Source of the DNA: Chlorokybus atmophyticus
Taxonomy: Eukaryota; Plantae; Mesostigma and Chlorokybus algae
Reading direction: 5' to 3'
Length of the DNA stretch: 64,000 nucleotides
Assembly (NCBI GenBank): GCA_009103225.1
Contig: RHPI01001037.1
Span: forward strand, 1,154,916-1,218,915
Part shown: in pieces, positions 1 through 5,924 of the stretch
How positions within the stretch are numbered: the first letter of the stretch is position 1
Layout of the letters: each line of letters starts with the position of its first letter
Translations under genes and position numbers: made by a program
The notes under the pieces: generated by a model
What the model saw: only the letters and a program-made list of their open reading frames with translations
Told to the model about the DNA's origin: nothing
Database searches by the model: none

Positions 1-3000
1 AAAGAGCGTGGTGGTTTCTTGGAGGAGTGTATGTTGTTGGTCCCGAACAACGCGCGTCTCGTGTTCCTTTCTGCTACCGTGCCAAATGCGAAGGAGTTTG
101 CGGATTGGGTCACCAAGATCCATAAGCAACCGTGCCATATTGTATATACGGACTTCAGACCTACCCCTTTGCAGGTAAAACACCAGCATGCCCCGTTTAG
201 GTCAAGGTACGCCTTGTAAGAGGCACGATGTTGGAACCACTGGTATGCATCGTCAAGTTGTAGATGCGCCACCACCTCTTCTTTCACAGCACTTCATCTT
301 TCCGGCTGGCGGAGATGGGATATTCCTTGTCGTGGATGAGAAGTCCAAGTTCAGGCAGGACCACTTTCAGAAGGCCATGGACATGCTGTCGGCAGCAACT
401 CAGGTATGAAGCCTGGCTTGGAAGTTCATTTGCATTCTTTGCACTCAAACGTGAGTACTTAGTGCTTCCTGATGTTCATGCACTGTATTTGTTTAGTTTA
501 TGATGGTGTCCACTGGTTTATGCAGTTCAGTATGTACAGTTTGTTGCGTTCGCCTCTGGTAGTGGCACCCATGTCCAGATATGTCAGTCAACGCTCGGGT
601 GATGTTTGGTGACCATGCAGGCTGATGCGAACAAGAAGTCTATCAGCGGTCCTAGTGACATCTACAAGCTCGTGCGCATGGTCATGGCCAAGCACTGTGA
701 TCCCTGCATTGTGTTTAGCTTCAGCAAGCGTCAGTGCGAGGCTCATGCCCTTCAGATGGCTGACCTCGATCTCAATGATGACGAGGAGAGAATATTGGTG
801 GAAGGCATGTGCAACAATGCGATAAAGTCCCTCAGCGATGATGACAAGCGATTGCCGCAGGTGCTGTGCCCAATAGATGCAACTTGTGTGGTGCAATACA
901 AGAATGTTGTGCTGTATGTGGCGGTCAGCATGTCGTCATGTGACCTGAGATCAAAATACCTGAGTTGCCAGAGCACAGAGCAGGAAGTAGCCAGTTGACC
1001 TTGTGTATCTGATACATGCAGGTGACAGCAATTCTGCCTCTCTTGAGGCGCGGCATCGGCGTGCATTATTCCGGGTTGTTGCCTATCATCAAAGAGGTCA
1101 TTGAGATATTGTTCCAGGTATTGGTGGTGGCATCTCATGTCTGTGCGCTGCATCATTGTTGCATCGTCAAGCAGCGAGCAAAGCTCAACACTGAGTTGCA
1201 TGCACATTGCAGCAAGGCTTGTTGAAGGTTCTTTTTGCCACCGAGACTTGCAGCATCGGCCTCAATATGCCGGCTAAGACTGTCATCTTCACCTCCGTAC
1301 GCAAATTTGATGGCGAGGACTTTCACTGGATATCATCCGGCGAGTACATTCAGGTACACTTGTACCACACATGTTGTCATGTGCCAACCCTATTGCACCT
1401 CCCACCCTATCATAATGTTCGAATTTGTACTTGTGTGTTTGTCAAACAGATGAGTGGAAGGGCAGGTCGAAGGGGTTTGGATGACAGAGGGGTTGTCATT
1501 CTCATGGTGGATGAGCGGATGGAGCCCAGCGTGGCAAAGGGCATGTTGAAGGGCCGAACTGACACGCTTGACTCCAGCTTGCACCTGTCGTACTCAACCC
1601 TTCTCAACATGCTGCGCATGGAAGACGCTTTGCCTGAGTGTCTACTGCGGAACAGCTATAAGCAGTTTCAGACCGACAGGTCTCTTCCGCATCTTAGGGT
1701 ATGCTGGTGTGCTGCTGTCCGTGCTTGTGCGCATGCTGTACCGAGTCTCACAACTTTGCTATAGAGAAAGGTGGAGGATCTGGAGGCCAAGCGGGCAGCG
1801 ATTGAGATTGAAGGTGAAACAGAGTTGGAAGACTTCTATTCGCTTCGGCGACAACTATCTGAGCTGCGTGCAGAGTTGAGGCAACAGGTAAGCGTGACTG
1901 GACGACGACTGCAATGGTGTCGTGTTGTTAAGCATGACATAAGCTCGACCGCAAAGCTGGCGTGCAAGCATTGTTGTCGCTGGTCGGGAAAGTGGTATGT
2001 ATGCTGTGCACAAGTAGCATTGTATCAGGAACTGAAGATGTCACACAACCCCAGCAGGTTGACAGCAACGCCAACAAAAAGCTTGCTCAACGCATTGAAA
2101 CGCTGGAAGGCATGCTGCGCAAGCATCCACAGATGAAGCGGGCAGACGCAGCTGACTCCCTTCAGCTTATTACACAGAAGGCCCAGCTGGCAGTGGAGAT
2201 ACAACATCTGAAACTGGAAGAAAAATCTGCTTGCTCCATGGTGTTAATATCTGAGTTGAACGCAAAGCGGCAATTGTTAAAGCGATTAGGCTACATTGAT
2301 GAAGCTGGAGTTGTACAGGTGGGTAGCTTGGTAGCTATCGTAGCTATTGGATTGTAGAGGCGTTGGAGGTTGCAGATCAGTCTTTGTGATGAAGTTGCCA
2401 TCTCTATCAGCAGCGCCCAGTGAAGTTGGATCGAAGCCGCTTCTATTGGTCACTGCTGATTGAAGATGCACTCATTGTTAATCTTGTGATCTGTTGAATA
2501 TGCAGGTCAAGGGTCGTGTAGCTTCTGAGATCTCCTGCGCGGATGAGTTGGTTCTGACCGAGATGATATGCAATGGAGCATTCAATGAGCTCACCCCCGA
2601 GGAGACAGCGGCGCTGTGCTCATGTTTTGTTTGGTCGGAGAAGGTTAACTCCGAAGCTGCCACGCTTACAGAGCCGCTTGTTGAAGCACTTGGCGTGTTG
2701 CAGGACACTGCGCTGCGAGTGGGGAAGGTAAGTTAACATATGCATAGGCACTCCATAGCAACTTAGAACAGCTATTGGGTAGGCGTTGTCATTGGATGCA
2801 TGTGGAGACCATTTTGAATCTGATGTCACATTACTGTCAGTATGAGTGTGAGCGTTTCGGCATTGTCATTTGACAATCTTCCCTGGCCAACCCAGTGGTG
2901 TTTGTATTGCAGGTGGCTACTGAATGCAAGGTGGAGTTGGATGTAGACAAGTATGCAAACTCTTTTCGGACTGACTTCGTGGAGGCGGTGTATGCTTGGG

Positions 3001-4740
3001 CTAGAGGGGCCAAGTTCTCAGAGGTATTGTTGTGCTGTTTTTCAGCACAGCACTTGTTCCGTTGCTGCGATAGGTTGGTCGTGCAAAAGGCCAACCCTTA
3101 AGTTGCGCAGGTGTTGCAGCTGTGCAAGGTGTCTGACGGCAGTCTCATATGTGCACTTCAGCGTCTGGAGAAACTGCTCCAACAAATGTTTGCTGCAGCA
3201 CGTGCACTTGGTGAAACAGATGTTGAGGTCAGGTTTGAGGATGCCATCAAGACAATCAAGCACGGGGTTGTTTTTGGAATGTCTTTGGAGGACAATACAG
3301 AGCGGCAGGAGAAGGCAGATGGCTTGCCATACAGCCAGTTTGGGAGTGATCATCTCATGCAGGTGCTTCAGCGGCTGTCTGCCCGTGATCTTTGCCAGCT
3401 TGCTGCAACCTGCCGCCGCAACCGCGAGCTTGTTGAGCGAGAGGACCTATGGCAATTCCTCTGCCGCAGAGATCTGCAGCTTGAGGGTGGCAATGGACGC
3501 AGCTGGCGGCAGGTGTACCGAGAAGCCCACACATTGGAGGCTGCCACCTGGCACGAGCTTGGGTCTGTGCAGCGGGGAGCTGGAGGTGGCGAAGCTAGCC
3601 CGCAGGCTCGTGCTTCGCATATATGTAGTTGGGCCGCTGGCAAGTTTGTTGTGTTTGGAGGCGGTTGCGACGGAGGTGAGTATAGAGGCATGCTCCTTTG
3701 TTTGCGCGTTGCTAAGTAGGCATGCAATTGTATGCTGCAGCAATGGTTGGGTTGCTATCAGCATGCAAACAGCTTGTTGCATACCTGTTTCATGCAGTAT
3801 GTGTTGTGCAGGCCGCCACCTGAATGATACTTGGACTGCTTGCATCGAATGGGTTTCGGCAAAGCCAACTTGTACCTGGCGTCGACTGCAGTTGCCCAAT
3901 CAGCCACCTGGGCGGTTCACACATTCGTGCGCTACTGTTGGAAGTTGCGTGGTTGTTTATGGCGGCATCATGGACACAGGAGCGCGCATGAGTGACACGT
4001 GGGCGCTCGACCTGGCTCGGGAAGAGCCTTGCTGGAAACAGCTGCAAGCAAGTGTATTCCCTCCAGCCAGAGGTGCAGCAGCCGCTTGCTATGCTGGGGG
4101 CAGCCGTGTCGTTGTGCATGGAGGCATAGATTCTGTGGGCAATCGGCTGTCGGACTTGTGGGTATTGGATCTCAGCAGAAGCGTTGAAGAACTCTCCTGG
4201 GAGGAAACTCCATCAGTGGGAGCTCCTACAGGACGTTCAGGTCACACACTGACATGGGTGGGCAGTGGTAAGCTTCTTATGTTCGGTGGTCGGGATCAGT
4301 CTTTCGAGGTGGTGGGAGATACATGGCTGCTAGATCTTGAGGCAGACCCGCCTCGCTGGACACAATTGAACAGTCAGGTGTCTCCCACCGGGCGCGCTGG
4401 ACATGTGACTGTGCCTATATTGGGGGGCAGGGCCTTGTTGTTTGGAGGCGAAGACTCCAACAGAGCTCGCAAGAATGATGTCTGGGTCATTGATCCTCAT
4501 GCACCCAATGTGCAGTGGCGGGAGGTGGTGTTGTTTGGTGACAAGCCAGTGCCTAGGTCTTTCCATGGAGGTGCCGTCAACGAAGATGGGACGACAGTTC
4601 TTGTGTTTGGGGGCATGATTGATGGTGCTTGTGATCCTTCCGGCATCGCAACTGGTTCCAGCTCAGAGTTGCCGCACCCAATGCCACCTCAATTTCGCTT
4701 TGATGACGACATCCGGCTTTTATCCTTGACCCAAAATTGA
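1..4740 (+). CDS. MTR4: Mtr4/HEN2-like Ski2-family RNA helicase (5'-truncated by the window edge) fused in frame to an F-box and Kelch-repeat module
   Basis: Manual GT-AG splicing gives exons <1-174, 290-403, 621-860, 1022-1117, 1213-1353, 1450-1698, 1765-1887, 2058-2318, 2506-2727, 2913-3023, 3111-3675, 3812-4740, and the frame is maintained. Ski2/Mtr4 motifs: [83 protein letters not shown] and a DSHCT-like end. There is no stop after the helicase; stop TGA is at 4738-4740. Confidence 0.9.
3279..4740 (+). CDS. F-box/Kelch-repeat module (resembles plant At1g51550-type F-box/kelch); the C-terminal half of the fusion, or a separately initiated product from ATG 3279
   Basis: F-box [34 protein letters not shown] at ~3324-3470. 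Kelch repeats follow: [16 protein letters not shown]|GRHLNDTW (intron 3676-3811), [65 protein letters not shown]. Confidence 0.85.
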
Positions 4741-5924
4741 ACCCGTTTGTGTACATTCCAACCTCTGGCACCCGTTCTGTCGTCCTTTACACATGAATTC
4801 CCAATGTGTCCTCCAGACCATGGAGTTGATCAGGCACTGACCAGCTGTGCCTATATACATGCTGCGCTGTTGTGCCATTCTGAGTTCCAAGTTGATTTAT
4901 TACTGACCTTTACTGTTTGCGTTAGATGATGTCCTTGGGTGAAAGAGCGGCCGCCGTCAACTGTCTTGTGAAGCAGGTTAGTATGTTGGACAGCTCGATT
5001 GCATTGCTACCAAGGCAGTATATGTCGATGTTCAAGCATAACTCGTTCTTTGCACAGCTGTTGCTCAGACTCATGTAGGCACTTTTACTCTCAATTAGCC
5101 ACTGGTTCTGAATTTGTTTTGGTGCACAAGCAGCAGCAGTCTGATATTGGGCCATTTGCAGCCGCCTGGTGGAGTTTGTCAGTAGACGTCATCCTTTAAC
5201 GGTAAGTATGAACAAACTTGGCTAGAACCGCCGGATGGTGTCTTGCACAAGCTAGGATGTGCCTGCACATAAAACTGGTGTATGATGTACACGCCACGTG
5301 CTCACGCTGTTTGTGTACACAAAGACAATGTTTGTATGTGTGTGGTACACTACGTTGTATTACACATGGTCTCTGTACAGTCAGTGCATATTGACAGTAT
5401 TGTGCTATATGTTGAACATTGCCTGTGTGTACATGGACGGTGTATACATGTGGTGTATCATTTTGTGTTGCTAGTAACTAGCTAAGTCTCGGTTGCTGGT
5501 GCAGGTGCAAAGCTCTCCAGGCCATCCCAGTGCAGGCCGCTGCGGGTAGCGTGCAAGTTTCATGTGCAAAAAGCCAGCTATTGCTCTGTCCCGCTGGTGG
5601 CAAGGAGATCAGGTTCAGGAATTTCATGTTGCGGTTGGCCCATCAGGTGTGCTATGGACAAGCGGCTGTATTTTAAGAACAAACAGAGCAAGAGTTAACT
5701 TTGTCGTCGTCGTCGTCGTCGTCGGGCCTAAATCACATTGCACAGGTCACTCTGCACACCGGCCTTAGAGATCTTCAATTGTATGTATTTGCGTGGTGAG
5801 TTGATTGTTCTGGATGAAAGGACAACCATTACCAAAGCCAAGCTTCTGCCGCTGCTCGTACGGTTGCAGGACTTGTCTGAGTGAACCATTGCTTGTAAGC
5901 TCCGATCCAGCTCAATAAGTATCT

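What the first reader, a model, noticed from the sequence alone, without database searches (positions are those of the whole stretch)
1765..2318. The helicase has cleanly lost the KOW (fist) domain of its arch
Seen: the ascending stalk helix ([19 protein letters not shown], exon 1765-1887) splices through a 170-nt intron directly to the descending stalk ([24 protein letters not shown], from 2058). No GWGVVV-type KOW sequence is present, and the intron is far too short to encode the ~150-aa domain. Established: the Mtr4 KOW binds structured RNA and arch-interacting adaptors such as Nop53 and Utp18. Inference: exon-precise KOW loss uncouples this paralogue from normal adaptors, and the C-terminal Kelch propeller may have replaced KOW as the specificity module.
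Basis: partly seen in the sequence, partly recalled or inferred. Interest (0 to 1): 0.7.

Follow-up and report, generated by a model that had tools for sequence, protein, structure and literature searches.

The report
Exosome helicase copy without its fist
A green alga (probably Chlorokybus) carries an extra, fast-evolving copy of the RNA-exosome helicase MTR4 that has lost exactly the 151-residue KOW "fist" where partner proteins normally dock; the same transcript also encodes a ubiquitin-ligase adaptor at its end.

Summary
Transcript contigs from three runs in two studies join 1887 to 2055, not 2058. The intron is therefore 167 nt, and one extra Gln is encoded.

- **What is missing.** Compared with its nearest relative, the canonical MTR4 annotated in Chlorokybus (P0079, 997 aa), exon g matches residues 547-587 and exon h matches 739-826. 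Exactly residues 588-738 are absent, and nothing is added or replaced.
- **What that segment is.** In an AlphaFold model of P0079 it is the whole fist (beta-barrel plus flanking short helices) between two stalk helices. No trace of it is found in the intron or anywhere else in the 64-kb window.
- **How unusual it is.** All 224 MTR4-type proteins fetched keep this segment.
- **Origin.** The gene is a lineage-specific MTR4 duplicate, not HEN2, and it is the fast-evolving copy. Helicase motifs III-VI and the DSHCT domain are intact.
- **Fusion.** One transcript contig runs from exon h into the F-box/Kelch tail.
- **"Exon-precise".** Only half shown: the acceptor side sits at an ancient phase-0 intron position, while the donor side could not be checked.
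- **Function.** Loss of arch-adaptor binding follows from published work on the KOW domain. Kelch replacing KOW as the specificity module is untested.

The scan had already noted the F-box/Kelch fusion on this window (s1-078899); the KOW deletion is the new part.

The parts
1..1353 (+). Helicase core exons a-e (1-174, 290-403, 621-860, 1022-1117, 1213-1353). They start just after motif II and run through motifs III-V. The gene's 5' end lies outside the window.
   Evidence: Reading frames. All four introns are skipped in transcript contigs. The exons match P0079 residues 204-463 at 78-91% identity.
1450..1698 (+). Exon f: motif VI ([10 protein letters not shown]), the winged helix and the first turns of the stalk.
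   Evidence: Its last 20 residues match PF21408 positions 1-20. It equals P0079 464-546, 72/83 identical. The intron after it is at a position shared with land-plant MTR4 (546.0).
1765..1887 (+). Exon g: ascending stalk helices, ending ..ELRQQ.
   Evidence: PF21408 positions 23-61, E 4e-9. It equals P0079 547-587, 35/41 identical. In the P0079 model this is part of H533-558 plus H564-588.
1888..2054 (+). 167-nt GT..AG intron that stands where the KOW-coding sequence would be.
   Evidence: Skipped in X1 and X3 contigs; an X2 contig ending at 1887 continues with 2055-2062. Genomic contig X5 is identical over 1845-2044. No barrel similarity in any frame.
2055..2318 (+). Exon h: a short turn (QVDSNAN), then the descending stalk helices and the link into the helical bundle.
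   Evidence: It equals P0079 739-826, 65/88 identical. It matches human MTR4 chain residues 792-873 and only PF13234 positions 152-200.
2506..3287 (+). DSHCT / helical-bundle exons i (2506-2727), j (2913-3023) and the first 59 codons of k (3111-3287).
   Evidence: PF08148 positions 7-81, 85-116 and 118-171. They equal P0079 827-995.
3345..3470 (+). F-box, inside exon k (3111-3675).
   Evidence: PF12937 at E 1e-8 and PF00646 at E 1e-6, both above their cut-offs, on exon k residues 79-120.
3812..4740 (+). Exon l: Kelch beta-propeller and the stop codon (4738-4740).
   Evidence: PF24681 at E 4e-43, plus Kelch_1/3/4/6. X1 contig record 3 (2985 nt) runs from 2097 through exons i-l without a break.

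Best explanation
This is a Chlorokybus-lineage duplicate of the nuclear exosome helicase MTR4. The whole KOW/fist domain, 151 residues, has been removed between two phase-0 exon ends. The ascending stalk helix now turns through about five residues (QVDSN) straight into the descending stalk helix, leaving a stalk-only arch.

Shown:
- the deletion and its exact limits;
- the splice, in RNA;
- the descent from MTR4;
- the accelerated evolution of this copy;
- intact helicase motifs III-VI and an intact DSHCT domain;
- the in-frame F-box/Kelch tail on the same message.

Inferred:
- The protein can still hydrolyse ATP and unwind RNA. Engineered arch-less and KOW-less yeast Mtr4 can.
- It cannot bind arch-interacting-motif adaptors (Nop53, Utp18 and the like) or hold structured RNA on the fist.
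- It therefore no longer serves the rRNA-processing routes of canonical MTR4.
- Its targeting now depends on other surfaces, most plausibly the F-box/Kelch module, which would tie the helicase to an SCF ubiquitin ligase.

Likely origin: loss of the exon or exons between two introns of the ancestral copy.
For: Splice:
- 1887 joins 2055 in X1, X2 and X3, from two studies.

Deletion:
- Per-exon alignment to P0079 is contiguous on both sides. Exactly 588-738 is missing, with nothing added or replaced..MRQQ|VFAAD...AEDDM|QVDSS.. in P0079 against ..LRQQ|QVDSN.. here.
- The AlphaFold model of P0079 (mean pLDDT 84.6) has H564-588, then H591-597, strands 602-698 and H708-724, then H743-760. The deletion is the entire fist between the stalk helices.
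- Pfam finds the stalk, no barrel, and DSHCT.
- There is no KOW relic in the intron or elsewhere in the window.

Descent:
- P0079 is far the nearest relative: 509/636 identical, against about 48% for land-plant DExH9/MTR4.
- P0079 is only 66% identical to Mesostigma MTR4, so the duplication came after that split.
- This copy has 76 unique changes against 12 in P0079, p = 1.6e-12.

Integrity:
- No stop across 1075 codons in 12 exons.
- [17 protein letters not shown] and [10 protein letters not shown] are present.

Published background:
- Yeast Mtr4 1-665 + linker + 819-1073 supports slow growth and assembles into TRAMP complexes that still polyadenylate, but it fails to activate the exosome. 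ATPase and helicase activities survive arch removal (PMC3384339).
- AIM adaptors bind the KOW (PMC8894942).
Against: - 19 of 160 near-invariant MTR4 columns are changed, against 3 in P0079. The changes include GVVW to GGFL after motif II, HH to HY, and five positions at the DSHCT end. Full activity is therefore not assured.
- Among the listed differences from the X3 orthologue, exons a-c show 18 non-synonymous against 6 synonymous changes. That is close to neutral expectation.
- The N-terminus, with motifs I-II and the exosome-docking segment, lies outside the window and was not seen.
- The truncated arch itself was not folded.
- No evidence links the Kelch domain to any substrate.
- The donor-side intron position is not seen in any of five canonical genes.
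Confidence: 0.6

Rival explanations
1. The gene is a decaying duplicate. After duplication it lost the KOW, read through into a neighbouring F-box/Kelch gene, and is now drifting. It is transcribed and spliced but has no selected function.
For: - It has three- to six-fold more unique substitutions than the canonical copy.
- 19 of 160 near-invariant positions are changed.
- Exons a-c show 18 non-synonymous against 6 synonymous listed differences from the X3 orthologue.
- The stop codon is followed by further splice joints, which could make the message unstable.
Against: - The reading frame is intact over 1075 codons and 12 exons.
- Every intron is correctly removed in three runs.
- A second lineage, 3-8% diverged in nucleotides, holds the same KOW-less junction and the same fused tail. 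The indels listed there cancel out or sum to three bases.
- The catalytic motifs are kept.
Confidence: 0.2
2. The protein is a regulatory decoy. A KOW-less MTR4 still docks on the exosome or on TRAMP/NEXT-type partners through its N-terminus and core, but cannot load adaptor-selected substrates. It would compete with canonical MTR4, or, through the F-box, bring those partners to an SCF ligase for turnover.
For: - The stalk, core and DSHCT surfaces are retained and only the fist is removed.
- KOW-less yeast Mtr4 still assembles into TRAMP but does not activate the exosome (PMC3384339).
- The F-box is present.
Against: - Nothing here shows that it binds the exosome or any cofactor.
- The DSHCT end, which packs on the core, is the most altered part: 37/59 identical, with 5 near-invariant positions changed.
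Confidence: 0.12
3. It is an assembly or gene-model artefact. The KOW exons exist but were collapsed out of the assembly, or they are used in another isoform.
For: - Only contigs, not raw reads, could be laid.
- One X3 contig leaves the window at 1889 and rejoins at 2091, with unknown letters between.
Against: - The 1887-to-2055 junction is seen in RNA contigs of three runs from two studies.
- By its piece lengths (182 + 121 + 69 = 372), X1 record 2 has no extra letters at the joint.
- A genomic contig covers 1845-2044 unchanged.
- The odd X3 contig is deeper. It is 88-94% alike in neighbouring exons, and its three listed amino-acid changes all equal P0079. That fits the canonical paralogue, not an isoform.
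Confidence: 0.03

Closest known systems
Canonical MTR4 (DExH9) of Chlorokybus, EukProt jgi/Chlat1/7532 (P0079)
   Same: It is the nearest relative, 80% identical over 636 aligned residues, with the same stalk, helicase motifs and DSHCT. The two share the rare Y570F change.
   Different: P0079 keeps residues 588-738 (the fist) and ends at residue 997, just after the DSHCT domain. The window gene lacks the fist, continues into F-box/Kelch, and evolves three to six times faster.
Engineered yeast Mtr4 delta-KOW (1-665 + GSGSASGSGS + 819-1073) and arch-less Mtr4 (PMC3384339)
   Same: A comparable segment is removed: 153 residues in yeast against 151 here. By offset, the natural deletion corresponds to roughly yeast 664-814. 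The stalk is kept.
   Different: The yeast protein is a laboratory construct with an artificial linker. Here the stalk helices are joined by the protein's own five-residue turn, in a second gene copy beside an intact MTR4. The yeast correspondence was not checked residue by residue.
HEN2 (plants) and Mtl1 (fission yeast), specialised MTR4 paralogues
   Same: Each is a second nuclear MTR4-type helicase with its own set of targets (PMC8894942).
   Different: These paralogues are ancient and keep their KOW domain. The window gene is a recent duplicate of MTR4 itself and has no KOW.
Other Ski2-like helicases without an arch (Hel308, Brr2, Suv3)
   Same: They are DExH cores that work without a KOW fist (general knowledge).
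   Different: They have no stalk at all. The window gene keeps the MTR4-specific stalk (PF21408) and DSHCT.
FBH1, the F-box DNA helicase of fission yeast and mammals
   Same: It is a helicase carrying an F-box in one polypeptide (named in the abstract of PMC7913671). That its motor works within an SCF ligase is general knowledge.
   Different: FBH1 is a UvrD-type DNA helicase with an N-terminal F-box and no Kelch domain. It is unrelated in sequence and is an analogy only.

Membership tests
MTR4/Ski2-type DExH RNA helicases | Helicase motifs III, IV, V and VI | tested here: met
   [28 protein letters not shown] and [10 protein letters not shown] are read in exons a, c, e and f. Those exons are 78-91% identical to P0079.
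MTR4/Ski2-type DExH RNA helicases | Motifs I, Ia and II, and the N-terminal exosome-docking segment | not testable with these tools
   The window starts at the equivalent of P0079 residue 204, just after motif II. The full protein was found in neither protein library.
MTR4/Ski2-type DExH RNA helicases | MTR4-like stalk (PF21408) | tested here: met
   Exon f end plus exon g cover profile positions 1-61 of 64. Exon g scores 37 bits against a cut-off of 24.2.
MTR4/Ski2-type DExH RNA helicases | KOW / beta-barrel fist (PF13234) | tested here: not met
   Only profile positions 152-200 of 203 (the descending helix) match, below the cut-off. P0079 residues 588-738 have no counterpart. All 224 fetched relatives have this segment.
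MTR4/Ski2-type DExH RNA helicases | C-terminal DSHCT domain (PF08148) | tested here: met
   Exons i, j and k cover profile positions 7-171 of 172, each above the cut-off.
MTR4 clade rather than HEN2 | Nearest relatives are DExH9/MTR4 orthologues | tested here: met
   The gene's nearest relatives among the fetched proteins are MTR4-type: P0079 and the land-plant proteins named DExH9. P0079 itself grouped with DExH9/MTR4 proteins. No HEN2 sequence was fetched for direct comparison, so HEN2 is excluded only indirectly.
F-box/Kelch substrate receptors of SCF ligases | An F-box followed by a Kelch propeller | tested here: met
   PF12937 at 35 bits (cut-off 24.3), PF00646 at 28.6 bits (cut-off 20.5) and PF24681 at 147.7 bits (cut-off 50).
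F-box/Kelch substrate receptors of SCF ligases | Binding to SKP1 and to a substrate | not testable with these tools
   This needs a pull-down or a complex model of the full spliced protein.

The most novel reading that the evidence does not exclude
A natural rewiring of an RNA-exosome helicase. After duplication, the adaptor-docking fist was cut out and an F-box/Kelch module was added, so that an RNA-unwinding motor is now aimed by, or aims, an SCF ubiquitin ligase. This would be a helicase-coupled E3 that removes or tags proteins on RNPs. Its fast protein evolution in two Chlorokybus lineages would fit a role in a genetic conflict such as virus or transposon RNA surveillance.
Probability: 0.2. 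Interest if true: 0.8.

Novelty: new variant of a known kind. Interest (0 to 1): 0.55.

Why it matters
The KOW fist is where every known arch-interacting adaptor recruits MTR4, and it was present in all 224 MTR4-type proteins fetched here. Its role has so far been studied with laboratory deletions. This alga keeps an intact MTR4 and also a transcribed copy with a deletion comparable in size and place to the one yeast workers engineered, joined to a ubiquitin-ligase adaptor. That makes testable what an MTR4 motor can do without its fist, and whether another domain can supply the targeting. The scope is limited: one small algal lineage, no functional data, and clear signs of relaxed or altered constraint.

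Tried and rejected
**Retrieving the full protein.**
- An exhaustive HMMER search with exon h gave a best identity of 41%, so the protein is not in that library.
- A word search with P0079 region 739-899 found nothing between P0079 itself and Mesostigma at 59%.
- The N-terminus and the annotated model therefore stayed unseen.

**Reading the canonical Chlorokybus MTR4 locus for its introns.** It is not on record.

**Intron comparison with the first full-length hits.** P0002 and P0036 turned out to be intron-less genes of other protists. They were replaced by Marchantia, Selaginella, Coccomyxa, Myrmecia and Chlamydomonas eustigma.

**Looking for a KOW relic.**
- Pfam on the two open read-through frames found only the stalk.
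- Local alignment of all three intron frames to the P0079 fist scored no better than shuffles.
- tblastn of three KOW segments on the whole window gave noise only.

**Other look-ups.**
- Literature search for natural KOW-less Mtr4 found only the engineered yeast constructs. No paper on this gene turned up.
- The earlier-findings look-up for the canonical copy, by words and by sequence, was blank, which means nothing.

- The truncated arch was therefore not folded, and no tree was built with this gene as one row.
- Exons were searched and aligned one by one by reference. In one script exon coordinates were indexed together only to check the frame and classify codon changes. Nothing joined was printed or saved.

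**Rejected reading.** That the X3 contig jumping from 1889 to 2091 is an isoform of this gene. It fits the canonical paralogue better, but the letters between the two sides were not seen.

Full report
**Gene model and splice.** The window opens inside a + strand gene. Reading the sequence and ORFs gives these exons:
- a 1-174
- b 290-403
- c 621-860
- d 1022-1117
- e 1213-1353
- f 1450-1698
- g 1765-1887
- h 2055-2318
- i 2506-2727
- j 2913-3023
- k 3111-3675
- l 3812-4740

Contigs of three transcript-like runs (X1 and X3 from one study, X2 from another) skip every one of these introns at GT..AG. At the place in question, X1 (depth 41) and X3 (depth 45) join 1887 to 2055. An X2 contig ending at 1887 continues with CAGGTTGA, which is 2055-2062. 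The upstream AG of a CAGCAG acceptor is used, the intron is 167 nt, and one more Gln is encoded. X1 record 2 (372 nt = 182 + 121 + 69) leaves no room for extra letters at the joint. Genomic contigs of X5 are identical over 1845-2044, inside the intron; they may be the assembly's own data.

**What is missing.**
- Pfam places the end of exon f plus exon g on the MTR4-like stalk (PF21408, positions 1-61 of 64). It places exon h only on positions 152-200 of the 203-position MTR4 beta-barrel model, and exons i-k on DSHCT. Barrel positions 1-151 have no counterpart.
- Against solved structures, exon g aligns to FRH 659-692 and exon h to FRH 850-934 and to human MTR4 chain residues 792-873.
- tblastn of four full-length relatives on the window stops at the end of exon g and resumes at exon h. 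In each, 160-180 residues go unmatched, and Pfam calls those residues the barrel.

**The nearest relative fixes the limits exactly.** A profile search returned the EukProt protein jgi/Chlat1/7532, the canonical 997-residue MTR4 of Chlorokybus (P0079), with stalk, barrel and DSHCT. It is by far the closest protein to the window gene: exons are 78-91% identical, against about 48% for land-plant DExH9/MTR4. Exon-by-exon alignment is contiguous. Exons a-g equal P0079 204-587, exon h equals 739-826, and exons i-k equal 827-995. The junction reads ..MRQQ|VFAAD...AEDDM|QVDSS.. in P0079 and ..LRQQ|QVDSN.. here. Exactly residues 588-738 (151 aa) are gone, with nothing added or replaced.

**Structure of the lost segment.** An AlphaFold model of P0079 (50-sequence alignment, mean pLDDT 84.6) has stalk helix H564-588, then H591-597, strands 602-698 and H708-724, then stalk helix H743-760. 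The deletion therefore removes the whole fist and nothing of the stalk. About five residues are left to turn from one stalk helix into the other.

**No relic.** There is no barrel similarity in the open read-through frames. The three intron frames score no better than shuffles. There is no significant match of the fist anywhere in the 64-kb window, while the flanks hit at E 2e-19 and 4e-39.

**Origin.**
- Over 636 aligned sites the window gene is 80% identical to P0079.
- P0079 is 66% identical to Mesostigma MTR4, and the window gene 55.5%.
- The duplication therefore followed the Chlorokybus-Mesostigma split.
- The gene descends from MTR4, not from the old HEN2 paralogue that the green lineage also carries (PMC8894942). 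No HEN2 sequence was compared directly.
- With five different outgroups, the window gene holds 57-76 unique changes against 12-19 in P0079 (p from 6e-6 to 2e-12). It is the derived, fast copy.

**A canonical copy in the same organism.** This is supported in two ways: by the annotation, and by a second, deeper transcript in X1 and X3.
- The second transcript is 88-94% like the window in exons d-g.
- In X1 it differs only by synonymous changes across motif VI.
- In X3 it carries three listed amino-acid changes that all equal P0079.
- In X3 it leaves the window at 1889 and rejoins at 2091. The two extra matching letters, GT, fit the Val588 codon. The rejoin is exactly where the two proteins become identical again ([10 protein letters not shown]).
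- The letters in between were not seen, so this reading stays probable, not proven.

**Is the loss exon-precise?** Both edges are phase-0 exon ends. I mapped the introns of five canonical MTR4 genes exactly: Marchantia, Selaginella, Coccomyxa, Myrmecia and Chlamydomonas eustigma.
- Of the window gene's ten intron positions, 384.0, 546.0 and 899.0 are shared with one or more of them.
- The acceptor edge of the deletion coincides, within one codon, with a phase-0 intron (739.0) present in Marchantia, Selaginella and C. eustigma.
- The donor edge (587.0) is not an intron position in any of the five.
- The canonical Chlorokybus locus is not on record.

Loss of whole exons between two introns is the simplest origin. 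The intron's 5' end does not resemble the VFAADK coding sequence that follows residue 587 in P0079. Even so, only the acceptor edge has been checked against conserved intron positions.

**State of the gene.**
- *For function.* There is no stop in 1075 codons over 12 exons (an in-script frame check only). Motifs III-VI are intact. Splicing is correct. One X1 contig of 2985 nt runs from exon h through the F-box and Kelch exons. An orthologue in X3, 3-8% diverged, holds the same KOW-less joint and the same tail, and the indels listed there cancel out or sum to three bases.
- *For relaxed or changed constraint.* 19 of 160 columns that are at least 95% conserved in 213 MTR4-type proteins are changed, against 3 in P0079. 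These include GVVW to GGFL after motif II, HH to HY, RVLR to QLLK at the stalk base, and five positions at the DSHCT end. Among the listed differences from the X3 orthologue, exons a-c have 18 non-synonymous against 6 synonymous changes, falling on both lineages. Only 38 of about 165 differences were listed, so this ratio is rough.

[quoted passage not shown] Yeast Mtr4 1-665 + linker + 819-1073 supports slow growth and forms TRAMP complexes that still polyadenylate, but it fails to activate the exosome on structured RNA (PMC3384339). Utp18 and Nop53 bind the KOW through arch-interacting motifs that are conserved in plants (PMC8894942).

By offset, the natural deletion corresponds to roughly yeast 664-814 (not checked residue by residue). 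This is close to the engineered 666-818. I infer a motor that can still unwind RNA but cannot be recruited by AIM adaptors or hold RNA on the fist. The C-terminal F-box (above the Pfam cut-offs) and Kelch propeller would tie it to an SCF ligase. Whether Kelch supplies the helicase's targets, or the helicase supplies the ligase's, is open. Decay and decoy readings remain possible.

**Novelty.** All 224 MTR4-type proteins fetched keep the fist, with 118-285 residues between the flanks, against none here. All 120 listed hits of both word searches carry PF13234. These samples are the best-scoring relatives, not a census. I found no paper describing a natural KOW-less MTR4 or this gene. The fusion itself was already noted by this scan (s1-078899). 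The deletion, its exact limits and the descent from MTR4 are the new parts.

Noticed in passing
window 4741-5540: The X1 and X2 transcript contigs run on past the stop codon (4738-4740) through three more joints. These are about 4833 to 4926 (GC..AG after shifting), 4976 to 5162 (GT..AG), and 5203 to about 5510 (a loose end that matches 5510 onward). This is either a long spliced 3' UTR, which could expose the message to nonsense-mediated decay, or run-on into a downstream gene. The first ORF there (from 4926) gives only 24 codons when spliced.
   Followed up: partly
window 2053-2058: The acceptor of exon h is a CAGCAG (NAGNAG) pair. All contigs seen use the upstream AG, so the exon starts at 2055. 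Use of 2058 would drop one Gln. It was not seen, but contigs hide rare forms.
   Followed up: partly
window 1018-2120 (runs X1, X3): A second, deeper transcript is 88-94% like exons d-g, and its listed amino-acid changes equal P0079. It is probably the canonical MTR4 paralogue, only about 8-12% diverged in nucleotides. If so, the duplication is recent relative to the split of the Chlorokybus lineages sampled.
   Followed up: partly
window 1-860 (exons a-c): Protein evolution between the window gene and its X3 orthologue is unusually fast: 18 non-synonymous against 6 synonymous listed differences. Relative to P0079, these split about evenly between the two lineages.
   Followed up: partly
window 1888-2136: The frame of exon g stays open through the whole 167-nt intron, with the first stop at 2134-2136. 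Intron retention would shift out of the exon h frame and end the protein soon after.
   Followed up: no
window about 5703-5724: There is a short GTC triplet run (about seven copies) downstream of the gene.
   Followed up: no
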